A DNA stretch of 64,000 nt from Dimorphilus gyrociliatus (GCA_904063045.1 CAJFCJ010000007.1:2983404-3047403); one strand, 5' to 3'; shown: positions 3,001-43,591, counted from the first letter of the stretch. Translations and numbers: made by a program. The notes: generated by a model from the sequence alone, not told the origin.

Positions 3001-4425
3001 ATTCCGAAGAGCGCTTGGTTTGCATAATTGCTATGGTAGTTTGTCTGATAATTCTATTTCCAACGAAAACTTTTCAAAGCATTGGTTACAATATAATGAA
3101 AATAATTCTCATCCTGCATTTTCATTTTCTGAAAAAGATGGGGGATATTCAATATATTTGGGAAAAACATACAATGAAGCTGTAAATGTTATTCGTGATC
3201 TTAAACGTTATGGTTGGACTGATAGGCAGACTCGCCTTATATCACTTGATATTTTAATTCTTAATCACCAAACTATTTCCCACGTTTCATGGAAATTTCG
3301 AACAAAGTCTATAGGTGGTGTCTTATCGAATATTCGAAGTGAATCTTTGAAATTATACAGATATACTGGATTTGTGGGATTGATTATCCTTACATTTGAA
3401 ATTTTATCAGTTGTGGCATGGCTTTTATGGACAATTCATTGCCTCTACCGTTTCGTAATGAGTTCAGAAATACCTGGATTTTTATTGTTTCTTTCTTTGT
3501 CTAGTTTCGCTTTTTCAATAGGAATATATGTATGGAGGACAGCTATAGGAGTAAAATTGGTTGAAAAATTGATGAAAGCAAGATCTGAATATACCGATTT
3601 TTCGGTATTCTTCAACGCTCATTACTATTTCATTATATTTACTGGGTTTTGTGGATTTTTCGGAGAATTACATATTTTAACAATGTTAAAACTATCCAGA
3701 ACGATATCAATCCTTGTCTGCACTCTTAAAAAGTCAAAAGGAGATTTATTAGGAATTGGATTTTGCTTATCCATAGTTTTCGTAGGTTACGCAAGTTGGG
3801 GATACCTTATGTTTGGTTATAATACAAAATCTTATCAGAGTTTTCAATACACTTGCTATTCTCTACTTGAAACTGTATTTGGTCATTTAGATTTCCAAGG
3901 CTTGTCTGAAACTTCTGGAAGCTTTGGAAAGTTTTATATAATATCCTACGGGTGTTTGATGTTATATTTCATCTTGAACATCTTTATAACAACATTAAGC
4001 GAATTTCTAACAAGCGTTCGAAGCAATCCTTCAGTTCTGCCTCCTGATCATAAAATTGTGAAATATTTGACAAAGGTATTCAGAGAGATATTTACTGGAA
4101 AGGCTAAACACCTGAAAACAATAAATAATGCAAGAAAACTAAAGTATGACGCGTATAGTGAGTTTATTATTTATTTGTCGCAACTATCAAGCAACTAAAT
4201 TAATTATCATATTTTTACGTAGTGCTCGTCGATCAAATTGAACTCTTGGAAAATGTTGTCCAACGCTGGCAATCAAAAGAAATCGACAACTTTGACATGT
4301 TAATGGAACATGTTGATAAAAATTTAGGAGTTATCTCTCTAAATTCTAATTTAAATATTAACGTAGACGATGAAAAATTAACCTCTGAACTTATCAAAAT
4401 ACTCGAAAATATTTCAAATGAATGA
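1..4425 (+). CDS. PKD1-like: Polycystin-1-like (PKD1/REJ family) receptor, 5'-truncated by the window edge: GAIN/GPS, TM1, PLAT, TM2-5, 6-TM polycystin channel module, C-terminal coiled coil
   Basis: ORFs 182-2551, 2666-4198 and 4222-4425 are joined by GT-AG introns 173-230, 2532-2585 and 4158-4222. Motifs seen: APNLIDF after the GPS, PLAT (YEIHVYTG...WFLSRIVI...FDCEQWLS), DDHLWVSV, FTRLQRLTVCF, VQPIKV, TOP loop and pore LLETVFGHLDF. Confidence 0.93.
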
Positions 4426-5443
4426 TCATAACTTAAAAGAATCATTGCAAAGTTTTGTCATATATTTCTGTCAATTATTTTAATAGAAATGCACTTAGTC
4501 CTTGATTATTGAACTTTTGTCATAATAATAAACTTTTTATAATTATAAAGTTTTTAGCTTTTGATAAACTACCATTTAATTGTTTACAAAAGGTGAAACT
4601 CTACTTTGAAATTAACAAGATTCAATCGATAGAGCTTTACCACTATTATGAATCACACTCCGTTTCATCATTAAATCTTTTGTAGCTGATATGTGAATAG
4701 ATTAAAAGAAATTAAAAAATATCATTGACCTTTACATACTAAATTCTTTTTCAACCTTTAATTAATATTTCACAAGACTTCTACTGTTATAAGACTTTAA
4801 AGCAACTTTCTCTTTAATTTTCCTAAGGTTTATTATAAAATAATCATAAAAAAGAAAAATGGAATTAATAAATAATAGTTCTATAGTAAAATATGCATGC
4901 AATACATGAATATGCTAACAATCTTTATGCTAATGTTGATTTTATCTTTACCCTAATATTTTTTGAATTATTGTCACTTTTCTTTCACTTTTAATCAAGT
5001 GCACCTGGAAAAGAAACACTTTGCAAACACATTATGCTTTATGCATTCTTTGGTTTTATCATTTTTTTTATCAATCTTTTTTTATCTTTAAAGTAACCAT
5101 GCAAGTAAAATCTCTTCATTAAAAATGTATATGTACTTTTTAACTTGTCATCCTACTAGTTCATGGTATTAGGCTGTAATCCTAATCTGTTATTTTCATT
5201 TTAATGTCAACTATTGTTTTTACCTACATAATTTATACTTGTAAGTGCTCTTTTTTCTACACAGTCATTCTTGTGCACCTGCCATTATACTTACAAATAC
5301 GATCAAAGCATAGTGACCAATGACAAACAACCTTTCCAGACATTGGCCTAGAGCTCTAGGAAAAAAACTGAAAAAGTAGATTGCCAGTGTAAATTTCTAT
5401 TAACTAGTGAAATGAAAACGTACTGAATAGGTTTATCTTTAAA

Positions 5444-8400
5444 ATGATAAAGATTGTACTCTTTCTAATTTTACTTGAACTCTCACTTGGCAATGGTAAG
5501 TAAAGTTCTCTTTATTCTTTTTCCAATAACCTCTATTAACTGTAACAAAATAGCTAAACATTGCAAGGATGGCTGGATCAGACATCTTGATAAATGCTAT
5601 TCCATTATCAAAAACATTCCGCAAGGTCCCACGACGTTAAGCAGTATATGTGAAGAACAAAATGCAACTTTAGTTAGTGTTAATTCTACGAGATTACAAT
5701 CTTGGGTTGAACAATTGATCTGGAAATCAGGAAGTACTAACACTTTTCTAGGACTGTTTAGAACCAACACATCCTTATCTTGGAGACAAGACTTTACTTG
5801 GTTTGATGGAAAAGATGTAGATTTTCATTTCTTCCATCCAAAGCTTCAGCCTTTTAAAACTGAAAAGGAGAATTTTACAGTAATTAATAGCAATGGATTT
5901 TGGTATGATTCTGTTAGAGACAAAAACTACAACCTTCTCTGCGCGTATATCGAGGGTAACACAGACAAATAGTGGAAACTTTAGATGCATTTGTATTAAT
6001 ATATATTTATGTTACTTTTAGCTGATGAAACGGAATGTAATCCAGTTTGGTATATGACTTATAGAAAGGCTAGTGCTCAAACGATCCTAAAACAACTTGT
6101 CATGGACAGAATACCTTGCCAGGAGGTTATTACGAATTTAATGTTAATGTATTAATAATTCAAATTTAAAATATTTTCTTGAAATACATCTCTAGGAATG
6201 CTTCCAAAAGATATATGGTGATTGCAAAGCAATAACTTGGAACTATCGTTCTAAGACGTGTAAACATTACTCTGAAAAAATGTATGCTGATAATGCAAAT
6301 AAGTTTTCTTACAACGCTTATGTTAATCATTATCAATATGAATGCGAAGGGAAAGTTGCTGTGTCAACTTGCACAGCAGAATTTAATATTGAAGATTTAT
6401 CAGACGCAAACTTTCAATCTTCGTCCTCATATACCAACGTAAAGCCTCATGACGTCAAATTGAATAATTATATCAAACCAAATAATTATGGAGCGTTTAG
6501 ATTTGGTACTGTTGATAAGTTTCAGTGGTTACAAATACGATTTGAAAGTTTTATTAATATGAGTGGATACTCTCTTCTTGGCGGAAATTTATTGGATAGA
6601 CATTACATTATCAATCACTATTTACTATACAGTTTAAATTGTGAATCATTTGAATATTATCACAGTGATTCAGTCCAGCAAATGGTGAGAATATTTTCAA
6701 AATAACTCCATCTTTAATTTATTAAAATGTATTATATTTCAATATTAGCCCATGCCGGGAAATAAACCATGGTCTTCTATAAAAGTTATACTGTTAGAGA
6801 ATCCAATTGCTGCTAAGTGCATTCGAATTAATCCTAGCGATTGGACAGTTTCACCATCATTCAGAATCTCCATTCGAGGATGTATTATTCCAGATGTGAA
6901 TATTCTTGGTAGATTAGCTTTATCAAAAATTTAAAGAATTCTTTACTTTTTTCACATTTATTCCAGAAACTTATGGCCATAAGTTGGGGATGGGATCTGG
7001 TCATATTGAGGATACGCAACTAACTACTAGTAACTATGCAACTGCATCCGTCATCCATTATCCACCCTTCTTAGCTAGATTCTATGGCAGAAAAGCGGAC
7101 TTTTCATTTCAAAAGCCTTGCTGGGAAACTAGCTTACGAGATAGCTGGTTTCAAGTTAATTTCGTACAGGATATTCAGCTGCAGTCACTCACTGTAAGTC
7201 AATCTCCATTTTGCTCTGGATATATAGCGAAATTTACGATTGCATTGGGATTGTATCCTGAGGACTTGGATACAAAATTGAAGGATATCGACGGGAACAT
7301 AATATATTTTGAAGGGACACCAATTGCTTTACAACCTATTATTTACATCTTGAAATCACAAATTAGAGCACGTTATGTGAGAATTTATGGTTTTTCTTTT
7401 GTTAGCTCTGGTGGTTCTGTATTTGAGTTTTATGGTAAACTGGATGGTTAGTTTGAAAATTTTTTCTATTTTCCTCTTCTGTTAATTCTGATTATATTTT
7501 GTAGTAACTTGTCCAAAGCTCAATGCTGATATAACAGTAACGCCCTCTTGTCCTCTACCTAAGAATACTGTACTATTCTTTGATAAGGAAACAAATTCAT
7601 CTTATACAAGAACAGAATCAGCAATGCTAATCAATTTGTCATTTTTGTATCATTTAACATCCTTTCAATTTACTTGGAAAAAACTTCCTACCCCAAACTG
7701 GCAATTAGAGTGGTCAAGAGAAAATGAAATATGGAAACCACTTGATCAATATACAACAACAATGCCAGATGATCTAACTATGAATATAACTTTTAAGAAT
7801 CGTCATACAGCTAGTAAACTACTCTTAACATTTTGGCATACTAACTCAAATTTCAACTTTCCTTGTGCCGATATTTCTATAGATGGTTGTGAGGCGGAAA
7901 TTTGCCCGCCGAATACAATGAATTACCTTGACTCTTGTTATGTTTTTATACCAGGGTTTATAACAGGTTTAGATACAATGTATCACGTTTGCGATAATAC
8001 TGAATGGACAGATAAAGCTCACTTGATAACCATCTCTTCTTATGAAGAAAATGCTATTCTAAGCAATTTAGCTTACAGGTTTGAATCTACTACCTATTCA
8101 CATATAATTATATACACTCTGTTTCTTTTTAACAGTTACAGCCAGCCTTATTTTATTGGATATGCTCTAAATGAAACAATACCTGAAAAGCCTTTTTTTG
8201 AATTAATTCTTCCGAATTATCAATGGGAGTGGGTAGATAAAGAAATGAATAACTTTTCAAATTGGCTGCGAGATTATACAGGCGGACAGCCAGAAGATAA
8301 AACTAAGAGCTGCGTCAGACATTCAGGAAGAGATGTTCATGCTTGGGAGGCAGTAGATTGTTCTGTTCCAGCCTATTACGCTTGTGAAATAAAAAATAAT

Positions 8401-11400
8401 AGTTAATTTTAATTTTTAGGCTTATTAAATTGTTGTTTAATGTTAAAAATATCAATTTAGGGAAAGAAATGAGCAAAAAATTGAGATGGTTACCTTACAT
8501 CAATAGAGTATTGAACACTAACTTTAAGAAAACTACGATTACTGCATTCAGCGCCGATGGTTGTGCCTATTATTGCGAAATGGAACAAAGATACGAATGC
8601 AAGGGTTTTTCATTCAAGAAACCTACCTGTTATTTATATGCAGGTACTTCTCTTGAAGGTATATCGAAAGGTTTAGGTTGGATATCTTGGGAAAAGTACA
8701 TAGATAGAGATAAATGTGAGGATGGCTTATTATATGGACCAAATAGCATAAAAGACATAGAAATAACATCGAATGTTTTATCGCAAGCCTCTAACAATCT
8801 CAGCAGACTATTTATGAACTTTCGACAATTTAATACTTACAAAGATCCTATTAATGAAGGTTATTTTAAAGCTGCTTCTTCAAACCCATATATACTTGTA
8901 AGTCTCTGAAATAACATTATGTTCACTTTCGGTTTATATTTATATTTTGCAGATAAACTTTAAGAAGCTGGTAAAAATAAACCGACTTGCTATTGAAGGA
9001 GCCGGAAGTACATTGGCCAATTGGGTGGTTGATTTTCAAATGGAAGTAAGTAATGATAGTGAAATATGGCAAGTTGTAATGAATTCAAAGGGAGAATCAA
9101 GGGTATGTTATTAATTTCATAGCCAAAGTTGTTGTTTGCAATTGTTTTTCATGTTTGAAGTTATTTTTGGGCAACATAAACCAGAATCTGCCTGTTCAGA
9201 ATAGTTTCTATCCAACACTTGTAACAAAAGTTGTTCATCTTCAATCAATAAGCTATCACATCGCTCCTACATTAAGATTAGAATTTTTTGGCTGTTCTTA
9301 TTCTTTAAAAGACGATCAAGCCAAAGGCCCTCTTGCTAAAGCGCTTGGTTTAGCCAACTTCTATATCTTGGATTCTCAATTATCAGCCGGTTATTTTTTT
9401 TATGCTGATGGAACAATAAACGAAATTCGACCTGGTTGTAATCCAATATTTGGTGGTAACAAAGGATTCTTTATTTCAAAATATAAGCATCTAAACAATT
9501 TTTGGCAAGTTGATTTAGGATACCAGCATTTAGTAACTTATGTTGTTCTTCAAGGGGCATGTCAATCAAATTTCCACATTTTAGCGTTTAGTATTCAATA
9601 TGCAAATGACTTTGACTCTTGGAAAGATGACGAACAAGATGATGGTACAAAACGAATTTATAAATCTCAAAGAGACAATAAAAGATGGCGTGCTGAATTT
9701 GCAAAGAATATACAAGCTCGAATTTTCAGGTTTTGGAGGGAGGGCAGTTTCGTCGTAGAAGGGGCTGTTACAATGGAAATTTATGGTTACCCTATAGAAA
9801 ATGAATTTTATATCCTAAACAAAACGGAATCTTTTCCAAAGAATATAACGGCTTCATCAGAAAATAATTCTACATCAATAGCATCTTTAGCATTTGGAGA
9901 TCCAAGCACATTTTGGTGCATATTAAATAATGATTCGAGTCCATGGTGGTTTATTGATTTTGATCAAATCTACTATGTAAATCGACTAGCCATTTACTAT
10001 AGAGATAATATAACTAATGAAGCTTGTGATGACATAATTATATTAGGTTCACAATATAATGAAACCAATCTGAATGATTTATCTGAGGTTTGTTTAGCTT
10101 TATTTCTTTATTCACAAAATTTTAACCCTCAATAATTTTTAAGGGATCATATTGCTTTTTTTCTGAAACCGGAACATCTATGTACTTTGCACCGGCATTA
10201 AGAATCCGTTTTCTAAAGTTTTTAATCAATAATACTGCTGATTGCATAAGATTTGAAATATATGGTAAGGTAGCTCCTGTCTGTCCCCCTGGATCAGCGA
10301 GACATCTTGACAAATGCTATCTTTCATCGAATTCAAAAGATACACGAGATAAAGCCGAATCATTCTGTAAATCTGGTTTGAATTGGAAAAGTGAAGGATA
10401 TATAGTTAGACCAAAGAGTTTTCTGGAACAAACATTTGCAACTTTGTTAATTTATGAAAAGTAGTTTAATTAAATACAATTTAGGAGTATACTGTATATT
10501 ATAATTTCTGTATTTTATAAATATTTCCAATACAGATTCGGTTTAAGCAATTATTTTATTGGATTAAAGAACCTTGGACCAAACTATTTTCAATGGGATA
10601 ATGGCGAAAATCTGACAACTACTCTTATTAGACTGCCTGACTTTAATCCAGAGACTTTTAGTCCAACTAAAACATGTACTGTTGGAACGAGAGAGTATGC
10701 TACAGTTGCATGTTCAACGCCTGCTTTAGTAGTGTGTGAAACGGAAGCAAACGGTAATTAAATTTCTTTGAGTTATATCTAAATAATGACGCTTATTTCA
10801 TATCAAAGAGCCTGATAATAGAGGGGATAGAGATGTTGATGATTGTAGACCTTCATGGAGCAAGCAAACGCAGAGACTGGTACTTAGTGATCCACCTATT
10901 ATTCTGAATGCTGTAACTCTCGAACAATGTATGGATTATTGTCTTAATCATAAAGATATATGTAAATCATTCAATTATCAAAATTTGTAAGTTTCCTAAT
11001 CTCGTAGGCTAACAGATATTTTAGAACCCTTAGTTTTCAATACTTTTTAGGTTGTATTCTTCGACTGCATGCGAGATAAATAATAAAACAGCAACTGATG
11101 TAAACTATTCTGGAGTACAAGCAACTAATTCATATACGTACTACGAATATATTTGTTTTGATTTTACTACCACTCGTCTTTTACCTGAATACTCAGAAAG
11201 AGAGGAAGAATTTGGCATAAAATCAAAAATTTTCAACAGCTTTGATTCAGTCCGAATTATTTATAATCTCTATGGAGTAGCAGCTAATTCTTACAACATT
11301 CTAATTGGCAAAAATACTCACTTTTCTTATCTTCAAATTGATTTTCCAAAAACAGTAAAATTATTGGCATTTTCTACCCATGGTTCATGGTCCACTGCTT

Positions 11401-14400
11401 TTTATACTAAAAGTGGAGGTTTCTACTATAAAGTAAATAATTATGATCATTGGATCCCTCATAGAAATAGCAACGGAGTTTGGATAGTAAGCTTTATAAG
11501 TTTTAAATTCCTATAAATACTATTATTAACATATTTTAGGATTATCGGTTAATTCAATCTAGGGATTTTGTATTGCATATGGCATTCAAACCAACTATTT
11601 TGTGCGAAAGCTTAAGATTTGCCGCTGGACAGTATAAAACTGTACCAACTTATGCCCTTCAAGTATATGGGGAATATATAGACAAAGCTCCAGATACTTG
11701 TGACCATCCCCTAGGTCTTGAAAATCCTTCAATGATAACAGATATGCAAATAACTGCTGCAAGTTATACTGCTTTAAGTTATCCGACGTATTCTCAATGC
11801 GTTCGTTACAATTATCAAGGAGGGTGTTGGCTTCATTCTACTCCTACATATATTCAATTTGACCTCATCAATTTATATAAAATTTCTGGTTTTGTGTTTC
11901 AAATATGTGATTCTACTTCTCGTACATACATAACAAGATGCCAATATCATTACAGTTTAAAAAGGAGTGAAGATTGGAAAATTTATAGTGAAAATGGAGA
12001 AAATGAGGTAATATATCTTCGGAGAGTAAATTACAAGAATGTATTTTACTATAGCTTTTCTTTAGTTAAGAGTTTCAGGAGCTAACCCACTTGATAAATC
12101 AATGAATTACAAGATTAATTTAAAACATATAACTTATGCTAAATTTGTAAGAATCTATCCAACGGCAAAAGTAGGACACTATGGATTTCGTTTGGAAATA
12201 ATTGGTTGTATTGTCCGTAAGTATTCTGTGTTTTAATTTTGTCAGTTAAGTATACTCTATATAATATATAATTTATATAATATATGTATATCAATAGAGG
12301 AAGGTCTACTTGAACAAAATTCTAGAAGTTCTATTAAATTAATAAATGAAATTGATGCTATGAACGAAATTTTCTCTTGGGAACCTATTAATGAAATGAC
12401 AAATTTAACTTGTATTGGTGATACCAGCATTGATTTTATTAACATATTAAAGATGGATTTTACTATTGCATACAAAATCACTGGTTTTCGAATTGTATCC
12501 AATTTAACGCATCGCCTTAACATTTCATTTGAGCACGGTATCAAAAATATAAACATGACGACTTATGAAGAAGGAATAGACTATATTACTAATAATGTAT
12601 ACTTTAGCATATTATCTTACTTTTTATGAATATTTTTGTCTTCTGCAGACTATCCATGATATTTTCCTATCTTTTCCCATTGTTGCAAGATATTTGTTCA
12701 TAACTGTTAGAAATATATCCAGCGCATGCTTAAAATTAACAATGAATGCAGCTTCACAAGGATGTAAGAGATCTTTACAATAAGTTTCTTGCTCAAATTT
12801 TTTTACCTGTTTCTTCAATTGTTAAGATTGTCCTCCATCATATTACCTTTTTGGAAAAAAATGCTTTACTGCATCTTCAACATTGGGTAGTCTGACTTAT
12901 GCTACAGAAAAGTGTACAAATTGGAATGGATACTCAGGCTTAACAACTATGAAAAGAAATAACCACCAATTTGTGAACTTTATGTCTGCAGTGGCTTACA
13001 AGTAAATATGTTTTATTGCAAGATAAAATTTTAATAGCTTTGCTCAAAGATCTAGGTCATTTTTTATTGGCATTCGTAAGATCAACAATCAATGGATGTG
13101 GGATGACGGAGATCCAGCTAGCAATAACTTGGAGAAAACCAAGATTACAGGAAGTAAAGTGTGTTTACTGATGTTCAACACTGGATGGATTATTCCAACC
13201 AACTGTATTAGCAAATACAGCTTCTCTTGTGAGACTGAAGCTCTTGGTTCGTAAACAAAAATGTGCATGAATTCGTAACCATAAGTGTATTATTCTTTTC
13301 TGAAGGTTTTGAAGATGAATTGTATGATAAACAATGGCTGGCTTATTTTTCGATTGATCTGGAGACAAACCTCACGAGTATTACTTTTGATACAATTCTT
13401 CTAACTCAATACGAATGCATGAAAGCATGCGAAGAAGAAACTAGATTTAGATGCCTAGCTTTTAGGGTTTTTGATAATCTTCAAAAGTGTACTCTCTACT
13501 CAGCCAATAGATTTAGTTCTCAAACTGTCCTCAAAGAAAATGTAGCACGAAGCATATATTTTGAATTGTTTCATTCAGGTATTTGCCAAACATTTAAAAT
13601 CTTGCAAAAAAAACTTATTAATATACTCTGTACAGGAAAGTGTTCGGAATCACTTCTGTCCAGTGGATCATATGGTACAACTTGGAATGTCTCGTCAGAA
13701 TTTTCTACAGACAGGGCAACATACCTCAATTTTCAACATAAAAGTACAAGTCAACTAAGTTGGAGACCTGCTAGCAGCGATGTCTTGCCTTGGTTTCTTG
13801 TCTTTTTTGATATGACACTTTCATTATCACATTTTATCTTGGGCGGAAATGCAAACCCTAATTTTGCCTATTATGTAACTGATTTTACTCTCAAATCTTC
13901 TTTTGATTTAATCACCTGGAAGAATATTACAGCAATTGATGGTACAAATACTTTTAAGGGTCTTGTGAAATATGATTTTACTAAAACATACATATTTTCC
14001 GAATCAAACTATGCGAGATATTTGCTTTTGAACATTCAAAAGTTTGAGACCAGTGCAAATGCAAGATTTGAAGTATATGGTTGTATTGATATCATTGTAG
14101 ATTGCCAGAGTATCAAATCTATAACATGCCAAAACAATTGGAATATTATTGGTCTAAAATTATCTAGTAGAGATAAATGGTTTAAAAGCTGGTATGATTA
14201 TACAAATGGTTTCTCAACAAGTGTGGAACTATGGGCTGGAAACTATCATATATCAAAACTGACTAACTACAGGTCATACGTTGTTAGATTTGATATGTGG
14301 TCAAAAGATGGAGAGCATATCTATGCAGAATTTTCTCAAATCATAGTTCGACCAGAGATGGAATCATTTACCTTAGAGTTAAAAAAATTCTTGAGGGGCA

Positions 14401-17400
14401 CAGCAACCCATGGAAACCTAATTAAGAAAAATATGATTTTCAATACTTTTGACAAAGACAATTCACGTTGTTCATCTCCAATCAAAAGCGGTTGGTGGCA
14501 TAGAGAGAATGAATGTTCATCATCTATTCTTACAGGACCTGAGTCTGTATGGCAAGTATTGAAAACGACATTTAATTCACAATATATCTTTAAAGTCGAA
14601 AAGTTTGTTATGAAAATGAAGTCATTATCTACCTGTAAAATCATAATTTTTTTATTATTTATACATAGAATTAAGATCTATGATTTATTAACAGATAATG
14701 TTGCTGTTCTAAAGAAGGCTTTTCAGAAAACCACCTATGGAGAGTATGAAGCTAAGCTTGCAGTTGATAGTATTAGAATATCAGATCCTAGTAAAAGATA
14801 TTGTGCAGTTGGAACTCCTACAGATTACCCTTGGTGGTACGTCGAATTGGGAAAGACGTTCACAATTGGTTCAGTTACGATAGTTACCAGCGGTAAATTT
14901 GCTACATTGTCCAAAATACCTTATTCATATACGTTTAATTCTAAAGTATTCTATGTCTTTTAATAGATGTCCATTCATTGTCAAAGTTCAAAATAGGCGT
15001 AGCTGAGGAATCGTTGAATGGCAATTTTAGTATTTCTAAATTTACTCTATGTAGATATTACACAGGAGTTATTTCTCGCAGTTCAACCAGAACCATAGAA
15101 TGCACCAATCCCTACCTGAAGGGAACTACATTAGCTATTTGGATGGTGGGAACTGATAAAACTTTAAGCCTGTGCGAAATTGAAGTATTACCAAAAAAAT
15201 TAGCAATATCTATAGGTAAATATGGTGATATTTGTGAATGGGATGGCGATTGTGTAGAGACGCTATCAACATGCATTCCTACTAGAGAACCTGATAGTTT
15301 TGATCCAGTGACATATACTTGTGGATGCCAAACGTTCACAGTAGTAGTTGATAAAAAATGTATACCTAGTACGTAAAACAAGAAAGTTATAATTATGACC
15401 ACAAGTGTAAATTAATTCATCTTTTCAGAGACTGATGTTGCAGTTACGAAAATAGCACTCTACAATTCAAAACAAGTCATTGTTCGAGATGAACCAATGG
15501 TTGAACCTTTTAAAATATATCTTAAAAGTGTTACGGGCAGATATATTGATAAAAAGAGCCTTCCAATGACTAATTTTAACTTGACGTATCTTATTCTTAC
15601 AAATTCAACAAACAACCATACATGGAAAATAAATTTGCCTGTTACATCTGTGCCAGGCTTGAATAAATATATTAAAACTCGAGGAATAACTACAATACAA
15701 GTTTCTGTAAATTATACATTACCAACTATAGACTGCAGTGAAGTTAAATATATTTGCACTGAAGTAGTGCCATCAAATTATGGCACATACATAGATTTAG
15801 AACAAGAAAACAATGCTTATTGTACAACAATGGAGCAAATGCTCATCTGTCAGCCTGGTTTGTAAAAGTTCCATTTTGTAAAATATGTTGAAAATGATTC
15901 TTATAAATATTTTCAATTATTAGATATTGACGTAGCTATAAGTGACATTCTGTGGAACTCTTCAGAGCCAATTTACAGAGATATTGAACAAAATAACTCC
16001 ATTATAATTTCTTTTCATAATTTGCCAACAAACAGTCACAGCGTTATTAAACTTGAAGGCGATAGGGTCAACTTTCAAATTGAATATCTTGTAACAAAAC
16101 ACAAACAAACGTTCAATAGTTCCTCTACTGGATGGAAGGAGTTTCAACTTGACTTACAAACTAAACAGCAAGGTCTTGCAGTTGGAAATACTCTAAATAT
16201 TTCGTCATCTTTCATTAGTAAACTTTCCAGAGAAGACTGCGAGGACAACATATATATTTGTATACGATTTATTCCATCTAATTCATCTAGTTTTAAAGGA
16301 AATAATACTGATAACGATATATTATGTCTTGATCTCAATCCACTAAAAAATTGTACTCCAGGTATTTCCTATACATGACTATAATATTTATTTTGCTGTA
16401 GAATTGAAAACTGTCGAATTTATTATAGAATAATTATTTCATTTTATGCACACAGCTATACAAATAAAACCGCAGATAGCGACTCCTCCGCAAACTATTA
16501 TCAGAGGCTATAATCAATCCTTTCGAACAACTTTTAATTGGACAAACATTGATAAACGATTCGAAGTTTCTACACTTCCAGCTAACAGAAACAATTTCCA
16601 AATAACACTATTTTTTTCTGATGTTGATAGAGAAAAAGAGGAGATAGGAAATTTTGAATTAGCAATAAAATCAATATCCGAAACAGCTAGTCTAAAATAT
16701 AAAGAAAGTTTGAATTTTGAATTTCTAGGCGTCTTGCTAATTCAAAGAGATCAATGCGAAAATGTTAAATACCTGTGTGGTATGGTAGTGCCTGCACAAG
16801 ATTCATCATATTCTCTCTATAATAGTTCCATTCCATATTCTTGTTCCGACCTAAGGGATATTATCAATTGTATTGGTCTAAAAATAGAAAATTTAACATT
16901 TACTCTAGAATATAATAGCCTTATGGAAGGGACATACAGTAACTTTTCAATATTCTGGGATAAGGGAACAGATGTGAATTTTAATGTTAGTTATGGTGAT
17001 GGAATAATAAAAACATGGAATTGGTTTATTGAAGGTCATATTCAATCATTTTTATCTATTGATAAATATTTTCTAACTTATCTGTATGAAAGATATGGTT
17101 TATACAACGTCAGCGTTACAGCATGGAATGACGTTGGACAAGAAACGCTCTGGCTGTTAAAAAATGTTGAGCCTATATTAAAGAATCATATTTTTATTAA
17201 AAATAGTTATGTACCTAACGAACCGCCTTTAGAAGTGTCTGTAGTTGTCGATTTTATCAATGAAAAAAACAACAAAACCAGAGATATTTATCTAACTTGT
17301 ATCATTGAAACTGGTCACAACTCTTCAGTTTCTACGACTGGAATTTTGAATTATTCACTACCTTTCTCAATTTATTACAACTATATCAAAGATTTATATC

Positions 17401-20400
17401 AAGCAGAAGCAATTGTTACTTGTAATAACTCAGTTTCCAATGTATCAACAACCAGTTTTTTCATGCTCCAGCAAAATATCTCGAATCTGACTATAGCCTA
17501 TGAAGCTGCAATTTGGCCAACATTCAAAAATTTATCACTAACTTTAACTCTTCAAAATGGAAGTGATGTTGAATATGATATATTTTTTGGTGACGGTACA
17601 AATGTTTCAGTAAAAACTCCAAGACTATTCGCTTATGAAGAACCATTAGTTGTAAATCATATGTATGAAATAGACGGTATCTATAGAACCGTTGCAATAG
17701 GCCGGAATAAATTCTTTAATACAACTAGTATCAGCGAAACTTCTGTTATAATTCAACATAAAATTATGAATGCATCATCTTCCCTTGTTTATGTTGAGCC
17801 AAGAAACGTTACACTTATTCTCCAACAGCTTTCTCCTCGTTTCCTTCCTACAAATGTTACTTGTAAAACAACTTTTGGTAACGATACTGAGGTCAATAGT
17901 ACTTTAGTCAATCTTCTTGATGGACTTTATGTGAACAACATCTACAGTAGAAGATATAATCAGAAGAGATTTAAGGATATAGTAGTTGATAGTAATTGTT
18001 CAAATTTAGTATCAAGCGCTTTCTTTTCCCTAAATTTAACTTTAAGGGAAGAGATAACTGGATTAAATGTTTCTTCCAATACCAATTTTACAGGTGTTAA
18101 TGAGACAATAGAATTCGTGGCATCAACTACAACTGGAGATAATGTTAATACATATCTAGATTACGGAGATAATTTATTAGACATTAAAGAGCATGAAAAC
18201 ATTTATAAACCGACTATGTTCAATCATTCTTATCGTTTAACAGGCAACTATACAGTTACATTAACCATTAATAATACTGTTAATGAATTAATATCAACTC
18301 TACCATGGCCAATGGTAATTCAATATCCTGTGAATGATGTTATTATAATTGGACCAAATGTAACTACACTTGATGTTCAACCATCTGAATTTACTATAAA
18401 AGTCAATTCACAAAATCAACCACCAAGTAGTCTATTTTGTTCGATAAATATTTTCGGAGATGATAACAATTCCACAGAGAATTATCAATATGAACCAGAT
18501 CTATCTATTACAAAATCAATTAAATTAATCTATGATTATACTAGAAAAGACGCTGGTCGAATATTAATGACCCAAATTATTTGCAGAAACTTGATCAGTT
18601 CTGCGGCTACCTCTCATAATATTAGCGTATATGAAAAGCTGAGCGTAATCGATATGGTTTATAATACATCTGTTATAAAATTAGAAAATTTAACATTAAA
18701 CGTTCTTGCTGAGAATGGTTCATCTGTAACTTATACTGTTTCCTTTGGAAATTTCTCTACTATGGTTAAGGCACACCCTAAAGTTTATGCTAGCGCTGAA
18801 CCCTTTATTATTCAGTTTCCTTTTCCTGAAATTGGTATTTTTACTATTAAAGTTAAAGCAGAGAATTTTGTGAGTAAATTGGAAACTTTTGGGGAGATAA
18901 TAGTACAAAATAGAATAGATAACATTGGATTAATAGGTAATAAATCCGTTCTATGGATTCCTGGCATAATTCAATATGAGCTTGTTTCAATGAACAATCA
19001 AGGACTTCTAACTGATGTCAACTGCTCATTTTCATTCAGTAACGGAATGACTAGAGAAGAATTTATACCTATATGGAAACCATTACAATCTCTCTATTAT
19101 TATCATACATTTCCAAAATCAGCAATTGGAATTCTAAATACTACAGTTATTTGTAATAATCTAGTTTCTTCAATGACTGTTAATACTTCAACAGAAATTA
19201 TTTTGGATGCTGTCATTCTTGATTCTATGAGGAGTAATGGTACAGTCTTTTTTAAGAATGTATCAACAATTATTACGGAAGTTAAGAGAATGGGAACAAA
19301 TTCTTGCTTTATATTCGATTTAGGTGACGATTCTGCAACAAAAATGTCTTTTGGAGTGAACGATGTTTGTCAGGAATACTCCGATTTCAGATCAATTCCC
19401 TTTACGCAAATCTCATACGATCAACAGTATATAATTGTTGAACACACTTATGATAAATTTGCTGAATTTAATGTAACTGTTAGAGCATTTAATTCTATAA
19501 CTGAAGAAAACCGATGGGTTATAGCAAAAGTTATTGATTGGCTTTGTTTTATTCCAAATGCAACAATCCCAGAGATATTTATGGATATAAGTAATCCTCA
19601 AGAAGTACCTAAAGGATTAAACACTGAAATACCTGTTAATATCACTCAAGATTGTATGAAAACAACCGTCGTAGTGTATGATTGGAAAACCTATATCTTA
19701 CCGTCGGAATCTCTTGTCTACTCATTTTCCAATAAGTCGTTTACTTTCCCGCCAAGGACTTTAGATTTTGGATTGTATCGTATTGATTATACCATACACA
19801 TGCTTAATCTTGAACATCTAAGGAGCAGCTATAAAATTTATATTCAGATAGTTCCAAGCCCTCTTCAAGTATTTTTTGTTCAAGGGAAAGAAACTATAGC
19901 AAAATACGATACCATTCTAACTCTAGATGCAATTTCCTTAACATTTGATCCAGATAATAATCCTAACGAAAAATTAAAAGGACTATCATTTTCAATGTAT
20001 TGCCGACAAGCGCATGAAACGTTACCAAATTCAGATAAATATACGGATGAAACTCTAAATAATATACCTACCTTAGAAGAATTTCACAAAAAGGGTGGAT
20101 GTTTCGGTAAAGGACCTGGTAGAGTTAAAGAAGATTCTATGGGAGTTAGAAAATTCAACACTTACTACATGCTACCAAATAGAACCTATATTGTAACTGT
20201 TAAAGTAGTATCCGAATACGCTAATCGAGAGAAGATTGTTGAACATAAAATTAAACTTTTACCACCAAGTCCTCCCGTTTTAAAGCTCACATGCTTGAAA
20301 AATTGTGGTGAAAAAATAGCTCTCTCATCAGATTTCATAATGAAAGTTGAATGTCTATCAAAATGCTCTGGCTTATATTGGACAAAACGTTATCTCTGGA

Positions 20401-23400
20401 AACTATACGAAAGACATGATGATGGAAACTTCAAAGAAGTTGACGATCTACGTTCTAAGACCACTGATGAATTGAACATAGATTCAATTAACATTGGTAA
20501 AGGGAAAATGACTCACGGAAAAATGCATAGCTTAATTGTTGAAGGAGTTTTAGAAGGTGTAGGAGAAACTGGAAGAGAAAATTATACTTTCATAGTTAAT
20601 AAACCACCCTACGGTGGTAAATGTGACTGTATGCCTAGAAGTGGTTTTGCTGGTGAAACACGTTTTGCCATAAGTTGTTTAAACTGGAAAGAATTTGATA
20701 GAACGTCCGATACAATGAATTTAAAATATCAATATCGAGCTAAACCAAAAGGAGCAAGTTTGAAATTCCTTCTTCATTTCTCTATCAAACAAGAAATTGT
20801 TTACTTAATGTTGCCTGTTGGCGATGAAGTTAACCAAACTACCGTGATCATTATATCAGTAATAGATTCTGTTGGTGATATTTATGATTTTCTTTTTGAC
20901 GTCCACGTTGAACCACCACCAATTCCAGTGGATAGAATACTCGCAATGTCCAATGATCTTGTAGATGGCAAACAACTACAAGATGACTTGAAAAATGGAT
21001 CATTCAGCCAAGTAGCTTCAGTTGTTTATTCTGTTACATCAATTTTAAATGCCAAACTCAATGATACAAAAAGCGTTTCTTTACCAAAGGAGAAAAAGCT
21101 TGAAAATGCTTGCAATCAGACAAAAGAAAAACTAAAGGTACAAACTTTAAACTATTATTACATCTAAATAGACTTTTGAAAATAACCAATCTTTGATTTA
21201 AGATCCGACAGAAATTGATGAAAGTTGCATTAAAAATTCCATATGAATCCACTGATGAACTTCAGCAGAATAATGGTCTAGTAAGCACGCTAATGTTAAA
21301 GTCAGATGAAGTATCTTTAAAATCTCAGGTTTGAACAAGATTGAAACCTTTCATATACTCCTTATATCATCGCTTTGATTTCTATACTTTTAACAGGAAG
21401 ATGCTAGTGATCAATTATTAAAATTAAATACCGCATTGAACAACAATAGAGAGCAATCCAAAGAACTTATTAATGAAATCTCTATAAGTAATATCAGTTT
21501 TTTTTGTAATTGTGTTGTCATTTAAAACACTAATTTGACATTATTTCTTAAATTATATAGGCCTTGTTGGAACATGTATCAGAATGACATTGGCAGCTAA
21601 TTCCGTGAATAAACAGGTTCAGCAAGCTATTCAATCATCAAAGAAGTCTAATGGAACAGCTACCTGTATAACTATAGATGATAATGGCAACATTACGGAC
21701 AGCAGTGACAACACTGAAACATCGTCTAACAGTTCGACAGCTATTAGTGGTACACAGAGTAAATTGAAGACTGTTATGGAGAAGACAATAAACGTTATAC
21801 ATAACGTTTCCGACGAATTGTTAAATGATAAACCCGTTGGGGAATCGCCAACGAAAGTAGAGTTCGACGAAATGAGTATTGAAATTGAACGTGCGGAAGG
21901 CAGAAAGATGAAGAATGCTAGCTATTCTTCATCGTTAGGAACATTAGAAATGAACTCAGTTAATATTGATAACGATACATGCTTCACTAGAACTCTGATT
22001 ATGTCAGAGATCAATCCGTATATGTGGGATAAAACATCATCCGACGTTACATCAAGCGTTACAGAATTTGTTATCCGTCCTTGTAATGTAACAATAAAGG
22101 ATGGAACGAGAAAAAAGCGAAGTATCAAAGATAACATTGAAGCAAATTTTTCATTAACTTTAAAATTGACAAACAAAGCAGACCAGGAAGGCCAATTAAT
22201 TAATACGACAAAAAAATCTGTTATTCATACTTTCAATATAACTCAGGATATACATCCAATACAATTATCTTTCGATTTAAAAGATAGCCCACAATTATCA
22301 GTATTAATAGGATTTGAAACTCGTCCAACTGATAGCATAAATAATGGCTCCTTTACAATTCCAAATACTAATAAGACATGTACAACTGCAATGGATGAAG
22401 ACTATTGCAGTGAATATCAGAGGACAATTATGTTTAAATCTCAAAAAAATCAAACTGTATTTCTAGTAGTTTCGAATGGAGACTGCTCGAATTGTTCAAC
22501 AGAACTTTTAAGCTATAAACTAATGATATTCAATACTTCTTGTAAAACTTGGGATGGGTCTGCTTGGAAGCTTGATAAAAGTTGCAAAGTTGAAGAAGGA
22601 AGCACTGCAACAAAAGCGAAATTTACAAGTAACTTATTCGGAAGCTTAGCTGCTGGATTAGATGTTGCTCCAAATTTAATAGATTTTGATACTGTTTTTG
22701 ATGATTTCGCTAGTAAATTAGCGGATAATGCCGCAGTTTTTGGAACGGTTTTGGCTATCCTTGTATTATTTATTCCATTTGCCGCTTTAGCTAGGAGAAT
22801 GGATAAAAAGGATGCAAAGTTGTGGGTACCAATGCCATTATTGGATGATTTCGAAGATGATAAGTTCGATTATGAAATTCATATAATGACTGGCAATAAA
22901 ACAGGAGCAGAAACAAATTCTCAAGTTCATTTTACGATTTATGGAACTGAATGTGATACAGGACGGAGGAAGCTAGAATCGTCAACAGTAAGAACTTTCC
23001 CTAAAGCTAGTACAAGATCATTTACTATGAAAACTTGCCATGACCTTGGAATGTTGGTTTGTATAAAAATATGGATAGAAGAGATGCCCTTCATTTCGAA
23101 AAAATATGATCCTTGGTTTTTATCAAGAATTGTTGTTATTGATAAGAACTCTAAAAAGTGGTACAGTTTTGAATGCGATCAATGGCTGTCGGATGAACAT
23201 GATGATTTCGAAACGGAAAGAATTCTAATAGCAACTCACGGGGAAAATAAACAAGGAATGAGTGATTTGTTTAAGAAGAATATTAGTAGAAGACTAACTG
23301 ATGACCATTTATGGGTATCGGTTGGAGCCAGAAGGACAAAGTCTAATTTTACAAGACTTCAAAGATTGGTTGTTTGTCTGGATGCTCTATTTTTGGCGAT

Positions 23401-25812
23401 GATTGCCAGTTGTATGTTCTATAGAGGTCAAGATTCTTCGAAAGCTCAAGCAAGTGGACTTAAATTTGGTCCATTCACGTTTACTATAAATGAACTTTAT
23501 GTTGGATTTGTCAGTTGTCTTATTGCATTTCCTGGTTTGATTATGATTACTCTCTTATTCAATGCAAAGAAGTATCGCAAAGTAACTGTCCCTTTTGGGT
23601 GGATTCTCTCGATTCTAGCCGCATTAGTATCAGCATTCTTTACAATCCTCTATTCAATTCAATGGGGAAAAGAAAAATCGTTACAATGGCTCTTATCTTT
23701 CTTCTTATCATTCCTTCAAAGTGTTGTATTAGTTCAACCCATCAAAGTGTTTCTGGTAGTTTTTTTTATAACATTCCTATTTAAAAAAGATGCTAGCTAC
23801 GAAGATTACGAAAATGATATCGGAGAAATGAACAAACTACAGGCGGAAAACTTGAATCATCTTCCTCCAGGTAAGACGAACATTAATTGAAAACATGCGT
23901 TTGCATTAATAATTATTCTCGTATAGAATTGAATATTCAAGAAAGATTGAGATCTTCAGCAAAACAAACAAGTGAAATGAAACGTAAGCAAATGCTAGAG
24001 GATAAAATGAACAACATGATCAAGAACATCATCTTACACGTAATATTCCTGATTTTAGTTATATTCATATGCTATAGCAATCAAGATCCAATGTTCTATT
24101 ATCAAAATAAGTCTATTTATAAAAGTCTACTAGATCCTAAAATTGTTAAGAGTCATGATAATCTATGGAAATGGTTAGAAACATCGGTAGTTCCTAATAT
24201 GTATCCAACAGCATATTATAACTCCAAAAGTAGAACTAAATACGATCTGAAATTTACAAAGGAATTAAATCATATGAGATTCTCCTCTGTTCGATTACGT
24301 CAGCAACGAATTGTTAGTCGAACTTGTAAGATTGATAGTAGATTAAAAGTACTGCTTAAAAATTTTGAGTGTGTAGATAGTATAAAAGAAGAGTATAATT
24401 ATTCACTTGGTTGGACGGCATATAATTCTTCAAATTCACACTCAGCATTCGCATTTTCAAACGAGAACGATGGTTATTCAATATCATTAGGTTTAAATGC
24501 CGAAGAAGCTCTACAAATAATTAAGAAGCTGAAAAAATACGGATGGACAGATCGATTTACACGTTTGATTACTCTAGATGTAACAATTATGAACCATGAA
24601 ACTGTTTCCCAAGCTATGTGGAAATTTGAAAGAAAGCGAACAGGAGGAATATGGGGCTCAGTTCGATGCGATTCTCTCAGATTATATAGATATACAGGTG
24701 CTCTGGGATTGACAACTTTAATCATTGAAATTCTATCCTGCGTATTTTTCATAATTCTACTAATTAGAACGATATATCGCTTCCTAAAATTTAATCAGTT
24801 ACCTGGAATGCTATTAGCCTTATCTTTAGTATGCTTTTTAATTGCAATAGCACTTTATGTCTGGAGAACGATAATTGGCGTGAAAGCTGTTGAAACTGTT
24901 ATGAATTCTAGAGAAAAATACACCGACTTATCAACCTTCTTCAATGCGCATGAATATTTTATGATATTCATTGGATTTAGCGCATATTTTGGCCAACTTC
25001 ACGTTTTAAGTCTATTAAAAGTTTCAAGAACTATATCAATTCTTATAATGACATTATATAAGTCCAGATACGAATTATCGGCAATCGGCTTTTGTTGCGT
25101 AATCTTATTCTTGGCATACGCAATATCTGGATATATCTTGTTAGGACCAAACACATATAAATATAGTACATTTAAGATTACTTGTTACGCTCTGGTTGAA
25201 ACCGTATTTGGACATTTATCGTTTAAAGAGCTGTCAACCTCGGCAGGAGTTGTTGGAAAATTATTTATCGTATCCTATGGACTATTAATGTTATATTTAA
25301 TATTGAACGTGTTTATTACGACGCTTAATGAATTTTTAGCGGCTGTTAAAGGTGATCCAAAAGTTTTACCGCCAGATCATAAGGTATTCGAATATATGAC
25401 AACTATAGTTAAAGACGTATTTAAGAAGAATAAATCAGACAACCCATCAAAGATATCTAAACCGGCCAAACAAACTAACTTTAAAGGTAATAAATTATAT
25501 AAAAACTCATCTATCATTGTAAAATTACATATACACATAAAGAGATGTTGGATATAAATTTAAATAACGCACTTTGTCTTTTTGACAGCCTTGGCAGATA
25601 GAGTTGAAGATCTCCAAACGATTGTATTCTGTTTAAATCATCATGCGCAATTAGACATTATGGTAAAAATTTTTGAACAGTGTAAAAATAATGAAGATAT
25701 ATTAGGAGATGAAAAATTGTTTCCATGTGAATTTGATGAGGAAGCATTAGAAGAGGAATTATTAAAAATATTGGACGATGTCTCTACAGCAGTGACTAAA
25801 CAGACTGATTAG
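5444..25812 (+). CDS. PKD1-like: Giant polycystin-1-like receptor, about 6,106 aa, 33 exons: signal peptide, [CTL-PAN-FA58C x3] x3, CTL-PAN-FA58C, fibrinogen-related domain, F-type lectin, Cys-rich EB/EGF-like module, 3 unknown repeats, about 9 PKD repeats, REJ, GAIN/GPS, PLAT, 11 TM, coiled coil
   Basis: ATG at 5444 encodes signal peptide MIKIVLFLILLELSLGN. All 32 GT-AG introns I traced (52-102 nt, 2,048 nt total) join in matching phase. The spliced length is 18,321 nt = 6,107 codons including the TAG at 25810-25812. Confidence 0.88.
5554..14085 (+). repeat. Internal tandem repeat of a CTL-PAN-(FA58C)n supra-module; units start at about 5554, 7900, 10280 and 12827
   Basis: Four CTL starts (CKDGWIRHLDKCY, CPPNTMNYLDSCY, CPPGSARHLDKCY, CPPSYYLFGKKCF). 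Each is followed by a PAN domain (C..eC...C.[AGS]f.[FYW]) and discoidin domains (LGM.SG.I.D.Q.T.S; ARYVRIY; LRLEFFGC). Confidence 0.8.
14100..14634 (+). other. Fibrinogen-related (FReD) domain within the giant polycystin
   Basis: WFKSWYDYTNGF...ELWAGNYHISKLT...VRFDM...AEF...F.TFDKDN..C....SGWW...C. Confidence 0.8.
14695..15195 (+). other. F-type (fucolectin-like) domain within the giant polycystin
   Basis: NVAVLKKAFQKTTY...AKLAVD...YCA...PWWYVELG...VTI...LSLCEIEV. Confidence 0.75.
15429..16880 (+). repeat. Three tandem copies of an unrecognised domain of about 140 aa
   Basis: Shared NF.[LI].[YL] and C..[VN].Y[IL]C...[VI]P......[YF].......[YC].......C. Copies 1 and 2 are single phase-1/phase-1 exons (15429-15857, 15924-16361). 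Confidence 0.7.
16880..21137 (+). other. PKD-like beta-sandwich repeats (about 9) followed by a REJ module
   Basis: G.DV.[FY]...[YF]GDG motifs with V.A.N.V ends. REJ hallmarks: LTLDAISLTFDPD, FSMYCRQ, GGCFGKGPG, PPYGGKCDCMPRSGFAGETRFAISCLNW. Confidence 0.85.
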
Positions 25813-43581: not shown

Positions 43582-43591
43582 CGCCATCTTG
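43582..43591. promoter_or_regulatory. YY1 consensus site upstream of the orphan membrane protein
   Basis: CGCCATCTTG (= CAAGATGGCG), about 180 nt upstream of the ATG. Confidence 0.35.

What the first reader, a model, noticed from the sequence alone, without database searches (positions are those of the whole stretch)
5444..25812. A single ~6,100-aa polycystin-1 receptor carrying an invertebrate pattern-recognition arsenal
Seen: what the ORF track shows as about 30 fragments splices into one frame from the signal peptide at 5444 to the coiled-coil tail at 25812 (32 introns, 18,321 nt, no frame break). Its ectodomain has 4 C-type lectin, 4 PAN/apple and about 10 discoidin (FA58C) domains, plus FReD, F-type lectin, EB-like, 3 unknown domains, about 9 PKD repeats and REJ. 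Established: human polycystin-1 is about 4,300 aa with one CTL, and PKD1-family proteins partner PKD2 channels in cilia and sperm. Inference: this is a multi-lectin sensor wired directly to a TRP-type channel, for microbial-glycan, egg-coat or matrix sensing. I know of no described polycystin with this architecture.
Basis: partly seen in the sequence, partly recalled or inferred. Interest (0 to 1): 0.88.

Follow-up and report, generated by a model that had tools for sequence, protein, structure and literature searches.

The report
Giant lectin-studded polycystin-1-like receptor gene
This is one real, expressed 35-exon gene of the tiny marine worm Dimorphilus gyrociliatus that encodes a 6,065-residue polycystin-1-family membrane protein with about 20 lectin-type domains on its outer half; the layout is unusual, is public only as an unnamed prediction, and has no tested ligand.

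Summary
Window 5444-25812 (+) is a single gene, identical to the public model DgyrCDS6354 of the annelid Dimorphilus gyrociliatus (6,065 aa, 35 exons). A spliced transcript contig crosses the lectin/PKD junction with an open frame.

The domain order is: signal peptide, 4 x (C-type lectin-like, PAN, 2-3 discoidin), fibrinogen-related domain, a tenth discoidin, three 143-aa Ig-like modules, PKD repeats, REJ, a GAIN-like region, then 11 TM with PLAT and a polycystin-2-like channel half.

- There are 34 introns, not 32.
- No F-type lectin or EB module was detected.
- The four C-type lectin-like domains lack the canonical sugar-binding motifs.
- The GPS cleavage triad is absent.

It is a member of the PKD1/REJ family in a spiralian clade, not an orthologue of vertebrate PKD1. 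At least four more giant paralogues exist in this genome, and the tail of one lies in window 248-4425. A flatworm protein shares the fibrinogen-to-channel core, so the lectin array looks like a lineage-specific addition.

The pattern-recognition reading is untested. No paper found describes the layout. This scan already followed up two paralogues elsewhere in this genome (s1-080216, s1-080292) and reached the same conclusion.

The parts
5444..25812 (+). Whole coding region of DgyrCDS6354: 35 exons, 34 introns, 6,065 codons plus stop
   Evidence: Exact mapping of P0151 onto the window. An independent splice-site model gave 33 introns and 97.8% identity to P0151.
5444..5491 (+). Signal peptide (residues 1-16); the only hydrophobic segment before TM1
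   Evidence: Hydropathy scan; in-frame stop upstream of the ATG.
5559..7812 (+). Supra-module 1: CTL1 (5559-5954), PAN1 (6051-6360), discoidin 1 (6433-6880), discoidin 2 (7074-7436), and a weak discoidin-like remnant (7609-7812)
   Evidence: Pfam; family HMMs; coordinates.
7843..10266 (+). Supra-module 2: CTL2 (7843-8397), PAN2 (8496-8714), discoidins 3-5 (8802-9292, 9404-9787, 9866-10266)
10279..12747 (+). Supra-module 3: CTL3 (10279-10749), PAN3 (10862-11168), discoidins 6-8 (11241-11671, 11780-12206, 12381-12747)
12763..14081 (+). Supra-module 4: CTL4 (12763-13242), PAN4 (13344-13643), discoidin 9 (13695-14081)
   Evidence: The introns here are RNA-confirmed.
14112..14714 (+). Fibrinogen-related domain, most similar to ficolin-1. 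The Ca-site motif is kept (FNTFDKDN against FSTKDQDND); the far P-domain did not align.
   Evidence: Pfam E=1.6e-17; PDB ficolin-1 E=1.2e-14 with alignment.
14751..15184 (+). Discoidin 10 (scores as F5_F8_type_C and as the NedA-like galactose-binding model).
   Evidence: F-type lectin motif absent.
15185..15358 (+).
   Evidence: Sequence; no Pfam hit at E<1.
15359..16871 (+). Three tandem 143-aa modules, each nearly one exon, with Cys at fixed positions; predicted to be Ig-like beta-sandwiches
   Evidence: Family HMM E about 1e-46 to 1e-51; alignment A1; AlphaFold2 pLDDT 89.5. The fold matches CARDB/DUF11-like and integrin-alpha Ig-like domains, best TM-score 0.72.
15369..15428 (+).
   Evidence: Spliced transcript contig.
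16362..16455 (+).
   Evidence: Spliced transcript contig; frame stays open across it.
16824..19643 (+). PKD / Ig-like repeat region: 5 repeats found with a family HMM, 2 above Pfam's cut-off, room for about 9-10
19635..21023 (+). REJ domain
   Evidence: Pfam PF02010, 161 bits, E=4.7e-47, nearly the full profile.
22541..22699 (+). GPS-like end of a GAIN-like region. The C..W..W..C pattern is kept, but CxCxHL(T/S) is replaced by KFTSNLFGS, so there is no cleavage triad.
   Evidence: Alignment with paralogues and deuterostome PKD1-like proteins; motif scan.
22733..22789 (+). TM1
   Evidence: Hydropathy.
22871..23227 (+). PLAT/LH2 domain in the first cytoplasmic loop
   Evidence: Pfam PF01477, E=5.3e-18.
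23366..23779 (+). TM2-TM5
   Evidence: Hydropathy; matches polycystin-1 chain 6a70_B, E=1.4e-32.
24016..25338 (+). Channel-like half: TM6, polycystin (TOP) domain 24145-24684, and PKD_channel 24694-25338 with TM7-TM11. The pore filter LGD of polycystin-2 reads FGH here.
   Evidence: Pfam; polycystin-2 alignment, E=3e-31.
25339..25812 (+). Cytoplasmic tail with a short acidic helix-like end; coiled coil not established. ATTAAA lies 3 nt after the stop.
   Evidence: Tail identity among paralogues is only 26-29%.
248..4425 (+). 3' end (GAIN-like region, PLAT, TM, channel half) of the next paralogue upstream, in tandem and on the same strand
   Evidence: tblastn: 50.5% identity to P0151 residues 4727-5989; it falls inside the Dimorphilus clade on the tree.

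Best explanation
Shown. Window 5444-25812 is one expressed gene of Dimorphilus gyrociliatus (DgyrCDS6354). It encodes a 6,065-aa type-I, 11-TM protein of the PKD1/REJ family.
- Its C-terminal third is the family's constant core: REJ, a GAIN-like region, TM1, PLAT, TM2-5, and a six-TM half homologous to polycystin-2.
- Its N-terminal 2,740 residues are four ancient copies of a C-type-lectin-like / PAN / discoidin unit, followed by a ficolin-like fibrinogen domain and a tenth discoidin.
- A stalk of three Ig-like modules and PKD repeats holds this array away from the membrane.
- The gene belongs to a family duplicated within this lineage, partly in tandem. In that family the outer array diverges fastest (30-36% identity between paralogues) and the membrane core slowest (50-60%).

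Inferred.
- The array binds an extracellular glycoconjugate, matrix or surface ligand.
- Because the GPS cleavage triad is missing, the signal cannot pass by shedding an N-terminal fragment. It must pass through an uncleaved ectodomain to the channel-like half.
- That half most likely assembles with polycystin-2-type subunits, as in the solved PC1-PC2 1:3 complex, to admit cations.
- My best guess for the setting is a surface or ciliated sensory cell that samples the environment or matrix, rather than a classical immune receptor.
For: Single gene:
- Exact map of the public model onto the window.
- Spliced transcript contig with 12 confirmed introns and an open frame across the lectin/PKD junction.
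- No hydrophobic segment between the signal peptide and TM1.
- Collinear full-length paralogues P0001, P0002 and P0152.

Family core:
- Pfam REJ, PKD, PLAT, Polycystin_dom and PKD_channel.
- PDB matches to polycystin-1 (E=1.4e-32) and polycystin-2 (E=3e-31).

Array: Pfam and family HMMs give 4 CTL, 4 PAN, 10 discoidin and 1 FReD here, and nearly the same counts in every giant paralogue.

Stalk modules: AlphaFold2 pLDDT 89.5, Ig-like sandwich.

No cleavage triad.

Identity gradient along the protein.

Lineage-specific clade, sister to a Macrostomum protein that shares the FReD / 3-module / PKD core.
Against: - Nothing here shows binding, a partner, a cell type or ion flux.
- The four C-type lectin-like domains lack EPN/QPD and WND, so classical Ca-dependent sugar binding by them is unlikely.
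- The acidic filter residue of polycystin-2 (LGD) is His here (FGH), so the protein's own contribution to a pore is uncertain.
- I saw RNA support directly only for 12064-17999. The 5' third rests on the public model and on collinearity with the paralogues.
- I did not search for a PKD2 gene in this genome.
Confidence: 0.75

Rival explanations
1. One reading: a microbial pattern-recognition receptor that senses microbial glycans with its lectin array and directly opens a TRP-type channel.
For: - Ficolin-like FReD with a conserved Ca-site motif.
- Discoidin and PAN domains are used in invertebrate immune lectins (general knowledge).
- The family is expanded locally and its ectodomain diverges fastest.
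- The genome paper says expanded families in this species are mostly immunity-related local copies (PMC7854359, Extended Data legend).
Against: - The CTLDs lack the sugar-binding motifs.
- No F-type lectin was found.
- No PKD1-family member is known to act in immunity (my knowledge).
- There are no expression or induction data.
Confidence: 0.15
2. A gamete- or mate-recognition receptor like the sea urchin REJ proteins. The array would bind egg-coat or cocoon glycoconjugates and trigger Ca entry in sperm.
For: - Sea urchin REJ1-3 carry C-type lectin domains that are under positive selection and trigger the acrosome reaction (PMC1934368).
- On the tree the Dimorphilus clade lies nearer REJ-like/PKD1L-type proteins than vertebrate PKD1.
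- Fast ectodomain divergence among paralogues.
Against: The transcript is well assembled (word depth about 55) in a whole-animal library. Dwarf males of this species are minute, so a sperm-only transcript should be rare there. This is a weak inference, because the sample's make-up is unknown to me.
Confidence: 0.2
3. A mechanical tether. The 5,000-residue chain of beta-sandwich domains would anchor a ciliary mechanosensory channel to cuticle, mucus or matrix, and the lectin-type domains would serve as adhesive feet rather than as a specific sensor.
For: - PKD repeats and REJ unfold and refold under force (PMC1934368 discussion).
- In the annelid Platynereis, PKD1-1 with PKD2-1 is required for a hydrodynamic startle response in ciliated neurons (PMC6294549).
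- The three extra Ig-like modules lengthen the stalk.
Against: - A pure tether would not need four different domain families kept in the same order in every paralogue.
- A pure tether gives no obvious reason for five or more diverging copies.
Confidence: 0.25
4. An annotation or assembly artefact: two neighbouring genes (a secreted multi-lectin protein and a PKD1-like receptor) fused by gene prediction.
For: - A short paralogue without the array exists (P0004, 2,634 aa).
- A contig spanning two genes is not by itself proof of a single transcript.
Against: - Three consecutive confirmed splice joints link the two halves in frame, with no stop over 1,740 codons.
- There is no signal peptide or TM segment at the start of the PKD part.
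- The same collinear layout appears in at least three other gene models on other scaffolds.
Confidence: 0.03

Closest known systems
Human polycystin-1 (PKD1, about 4,300 aa; structure 6A70 with polycystin-2)
   Same: PKD repeats, REJ, a membrane-proximal GAIN-type region, 11 TM, PLAT after TM1, a TOP domain and a channel-like last six TM. It also carries one C-type lectin-like domain in the ectodomain.
   Different: - No LRR, WSC or LDL-A domains here.
- About 19 extra lectin-type domains and three extra Ig-like modules.
- The GPS HL^T triad is absent.
- The tree places this protein far from vertebrate PKD1.
- The channel half scores better against polycystin-2 than against PKD1L3.
Sea urchin REJ proteins (SpREJ1-10) and vertebrate PKD1L2 / PKDREJ
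   Same: PKD1-family members that combine REJ, GPS, PLAT and TM with one or two lectin modules (C-type, SUEL) and that exist as lineage-specific multigene families (PMC1934368). PKD1L2-type proteins were among the best non-spiralian hits to the short Dimorphilus paralogue P0004.
   Different: They carry 0-2 lectin domains, not about 20. They have no PAN, discoidin or fibrinogen domains. suREJ3 and PKD1 are cleaved at the GPS, and that motif is missing here.
Macrostomum lignano BOX15_Mlig000329g1 (P0153, 3,556 aa, unnamed prediction)
   Same: Same order: fibrinogen-related domain, three 143-aa modules, PKD repeats, REJ, uncleavable GPS-like motif, PLAT and channel half. It is the sister group on the tree.
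   Different: It lacks the 4 x (CTL-PAN-discoidin) array, which therefore looks like an addition on the annelid side.
Paralogues in the same genome: DgyrCDS14438 (6,071 aa), DgyrCDS14890 (5,744 aa), DgyrCDS14777 (5,543 aa), and the tandem neighbour in window 248-4425
   Same: Collinear, with the same domain families in the same order, including 10 discoidin domains and 1 FReD each.
   Different: Only 30-36% identical in the array against 50-60% in the membrane core. The counts of detectable CTL and PAN domains vary (3-4 and 1-4).
Platynereis PKD1-1 (annelid mechanosensory polycystin)
   Same: An annelid PKD1-family member outside the polycystin-1 and PKD1L1 groups that works with a PKD2 in ciliated sensory neurons (PMC6294549).

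Membership tests
PKD1 / REJ family (polycystin-1-like proteins) | REJ domain | tested here: met
   PF02010, 161 bits against a cut-off of 25, covering profile positions 3-449 of 452.
PKD1 / REJ family (polycystin-1-like proteins) | PLAT/LH2 domain directly after the first TM segment | tested here: met
   PF01477, E=5.3e-18, at residues about 5,160-5,280, just after TM1 at 5,112-5,130.
PKD1 / REJ family (polycystin-1-like proteins) | Eleven TM segments, the last six homologous to TRPP channels, with a polycystin (TOP) domain | tested here: met
   Ten strong hydropathy peaks, plus an S4-like segment covered by the S1-S6 alignment to polycystin-2. PF20519 and PF08016 both score above their cut-offs.
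PKD1 / REJ family (polycystin-1-like proteins) | GPS motif with the autoproteolytic HL(T/S) triad upstream of TM1 | tested here: not met
   The region aligns with the GPS of deuterostome relatives, which keep CxCxHLTSF. This protein, all Dimorphilus paralogues, and the Macrostomum and Lingula relatives read KF(T/K)SNLFGS instead. Pfam GPS was not hit. The sea urchin paper shows the family tolerates a member without a GPS (SpREJ10).
PKD1 / REJ family (polycystin-1-like proteins) | C-terminal coiled coil | not tested
   No coiled-coil predictor was run. The tail is short, acidic and poorly conserved (26-29% identity). Not all family members have a coiled coil.
Polycystin-1 proper (orthologue of vertebrate PKD1) | Groups with PKD1 on a tree, and has LRR-WSC-CTL-LDL-A followed by a long PKD repeat array | tested here: not met
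   The quick ML tree places it in a spiralian clade (support 99-100), away from the fish PKD1 sequences. No LRR, WSC or LDL-A hits.
Ca-dependent carbohydrate-recognition C-type lectin domains | C-type lectin fold signature | tested here: met
   Four Lectin_C hits above Pfam's cut-off.
Ca-dependent carbohydrate-recognition C-type lectin domains | EPN or QPD tripeptide plus a WND motif at the primary Ca/sugar site | tested here: not met
   None of the four domains has either motif at the expected place. The equivalent positions read QPF/QPE/NPE and WYD/WEA/EYA/WII.
F-type lectin | H-x(about 24)-R-x-D-x(4)-R/K fucose-binding motif | tested here: not met
   No match in residues 1-3,300. The candidate domain scores as F5_F8_type_C and as the NedA-like model.
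Fibrinogen-related (ficolin-like) lectin domain | FReD fold with Ca site and acetyl-group pocket in the P domain | tested here: inconclusive
   PF00147, E=1.6e-17. The alignment to ficolin-1 keeps the Ca-site motif but stops before the pocket-forming end of the P domain.

The most novel reading that the evidence does not exclude
The giant paralogues, three of them head to tail at this locus, form a 'variable sensor, constant channel' system. Fast-diverging lectin-type arrays would each recognise a different non-self, conspecific or environmental surface. Without GPS cleavage, each would directly gate the same polycystin-type cation channel. That would make them ionotropic recognition receptors, a kind not described in animals.
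Probability: 0.15. Interest if true: 0.8.

Novelty: new variant of a known kind. Interest (0 to 1): 0.5.

Why it matters
Polycystin-1 ligands remain unknown despite the protein's role in human kidney disease. A natural family in which the same membrane core carries about 20 recognisable binding domains, in several diverging copies and in a small culturable animal with a 74-Mb genome, would help test how a polycystin ectodomain talks to its channel half. It would also test whether GPS cleavage is needed for that. In addition, the comparison suggests how the ectodomain was built: a fibrinogen / Ig-like / PKD core shared with a flatworm, plus a four-fold CTL-PAN-discoidin array added later. As it stands, this is a well-supported annotation of an unusual family member, not a demonstrated new mechanism.

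Tried and rejected
- The search for homologous proteins on the lectin array (residues 20-2750) returned only the protein itself and two unrelated multi-discoidin proteins. It missed even the known paralogues. This is a blank caused by the word filter and says nothing about distribution.
- The same tool on the short paralogue gave only 12 hits.
- My first splice-site dynamic programme over-called introns until I added intron-length and count penalties. Its final model still differed from the public one at seven places, so I adopted the public model for coordinates.
- Self-BLAST of the whole protein gave no internal repeats until I cut it into windows.
- Contig look-up for the 764-aa Logan relative P0003 gave no DNA and no organism.
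- The two-gene reading was considered and rejected (see rivals).
- Orthology with vertebrate PKD1 was rejected on the tree.
A search of earlier notes by words found none.

Full report
**Source and gene structure**

The plus strand between 5.4 and 25.8 kb holds about 27 long stop-free pieces. Pfam assigns them as follows:
- Lectin_C, PAN_1, F5_F8_type_C and Fibrinogen_C to the pieces from 5.4 to 15 kb.
- PKD, REJ, PLAT, Polycystin_dom and PKD_channel to the pieces from 16.4 to 25.5 kb.

An exhaustive HMMER search with the PLAT exon found predicted proteins of 6,071 and 5,543 aa from the annelid Dimorphilus gyrociliatus. A follow-up search found DgyrCDS6354 (P0151, 6,065 aa, on a 4.6-Mb scaffold).

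P0151 maps onto window 5444-25812 residue for residue, with 35 exons, 34 GT..AG introns of 52-102 nt and a CDS of 18,198 nt. The window is therefore the D. gyrociliatus reference genome, and the gene is already present in NCBI and UniProt as an unnamed prediction.

Such introns cannot be seen by eye.

**RNA evidence**

Run X1 (2017) holds one 17,611-nt contig that lies on 12064-17999 in eight or more pieces joined by 11 GT..AG joints. The DNA run X2 covers the same stretch unspliced. A 12th intron (12008-12065) follows from the contig's loose end.

Joining the exons gives one frame with no stop in 1,740 codons. That frame runs from discoidin 8 through the fibrinogen domain and the three unnamed modules into the PKD repeats.

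Eleven of the 12 introns match the public model. At 13002 the transcript uses an acceptor 6 nt upstream of the annotated one.

By its length, the contig should extend from about codon 970 to beyond the stop. I saw only the 6 kb that I was allowed to lay.

The two-gene alternative is also contradicted in two other ways:
- No hydrophobic segment lies between the signal peptide and TM1 at residue 5,112.
- Three other full-length gene models on other scaffolds are collinear with this one.

**Anatomy**

Pfam on overlapping windows of P0151, plus HMMs built from the protein's own repeats and run on four paralogues, give the following order:
- Signal peptide.
- Four units of C-type-lectin-like, PAN and 2-3 discoidin domains (unit 1 has a weak third discoidin; unit 4 has one).
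- A fibrinogen-related domain.
- A tenth discoidin.
- A 58-residue Cys-rich linker.
- Three 143-residue modules.
- A 940-residue PKD/Ig region with five detectable PKD domains.
- REJ.
- A GAIN-like region.
- TM1, PLAT, TM2-5, TM6, the polycystin TOP domain, TM7-11, and a 90-residue tail.

Copies of the CTL-PAN-discoidin unit within the protein are only 20-26% identical to each other. The paralogues are collinear at 30-36% identity. The four-fold duplication of the unit is therefore older than the gene duplications.

The three unnamed modules fold with high confidence (pLDDT 89.5) into an Ig-like sandwich. Its nearest matches are CARDB/DUF11-type domains and the Ig-like domains of integrin alpha chains. 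I read them as stalk elements, not lectins.

- None of the four C-type lectin-like domains has the EPN/QPD tripeptide or the WND motif of Ca-dependent sugar-binding CRDs.
- No F-type lectin motif and no EB module were found.
- The fibrinogen domain is ficolin-like and keeps a Ca-site motif, but the alignment ends before the ligand pocket.
- Upstream of TM1, the deuterostome relatives keep CxCxHLTSF. This protein, every Dimorphilus paralogue, and the Macrostomum and Lingula relatives read KFTSNLFGS, without the cysteines and without the HL(T/S) cleavage triad. The following stalk (PNxIDF) stays conserved. GPS autoproteolysis, which is needed for mature human PC1, is therefore unlikely here.
- In the pore region, the polycystin-2 filter LGD aligns with FGH.

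**Family and distribution**

A quick ML tree of the TM1-to-TM11 region (27 sequences, 983 columns) shows:
- All Dimorphilus proteins form one clade (support 100).
- The Macrostomum lignano protein is sister to that clade (99).
- Lingula plus Saccostrea come next (99).
- Fish PKD1 is far away.

The clade of giants includes the tandem neighbour whose 3' end occupies window 248-4425. It also includes a 2,634-aa member without the array. That member is either a secondary loss or an incomplete gene model.

The Macrostomum protein has the fibrinogen domain, the three modules and the PKD repeats in the same order, but no CTL-PAN-discoidin array.

Elsewhere, PKD1-like proteins carry one to three such domains. 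Examples are a crinoid (3 discoidin), amphioxus (discoidin plus FReD), hemichordates (1-2 CTL) and a tunicate (2 CTL plus discoidin).

Adding lectin-type modules to a PKD1 ectodomain is therefore common. An array of about 19 in a 6,000-residue protein was seen only in Dimorphilus.

**Literature**

- The sea urchin REJ paper lists 0-2 C-type lectin domains and one SUEL domain per protein (PMC1934368).
- The D. gyrociliatus genome paper mentions neither PKD nor lectins in its main text (PMC7854359).
- Other searches found no description of this layout.

**Earlier work in this scan**

Two paralogues on other pieces of this genome were already followed up, with the same conclusion (s1-080216, s1-080292). 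Notes on this locus report the four-fold unit, the three modules, the loss of GPS residues in a neighbour, and a tandem pair upstream. I re-tested the first three on this gene. Of the tandem pair I saw only the tail that lies inside the window.

**Mechanism**

Shown:
- The domain order.
- The uncleavable GPS-like site.
- The polycystin-2-like channel half.
- The identity gradient between paralogues: array 30-36%, PKD/REJ/GAIN 42-47%, membrane core 50-60%.

Inferred:
- The array binds an extracellular ligand.
- The signal passes through an intact ectodomain to a heteromeric polycystin-type channel.

Which ligand and which cell type remain open. I rank an environmental, matrix or mechanical sensor in surface sensory cells first, then gamete recognition, then immune recognition.

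Noticed in passing
window 248-4425 (+): The 3' end of another giant paralogue (GAIN-like region, PLAT, TM, channel half; 50.5% identical to residues 4727-5989 of this gene). It ends about 1 kb upstream of this gene's ATG.
   Followed up: partly
window 13002-13055: The transcript contig uses acceptor 13049, while the public model uses 13055. This is a 6-nt, in-frame difference of two residues, possibly tandem alternative acceptors.
   Followed up: partly
beyond window 25812: By its record coordinates, the 17.6-kb transcript contig should run about 2.3 kb past the stop codon. That could be a long 3' UTR, retained introns, or a merge with a neighbouring gene's transcript in an unstranded assembly. 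I did not look at it.
   Followed up: no
P0004 (DgyrCDS13672, 2,634 aa; another scaffold): A short family member without the lectin array nests inside the clade of giants on the tree. It is either a secondary loss of the array or a truncated gene model.
   Followed up: partly
P0153 and P0136 (Macrostomum lignano): The 143-aa Ig-like module and the uncleavable GPS-like motif are shared with flatworm proteins (and the motif also with a Lingula relative), so both predate the annelid lineage.
   Followed up: partly
window 42001-44000: GC drops to 0.23, against about 0.31 elsewhere in the window.
   Followed up: no
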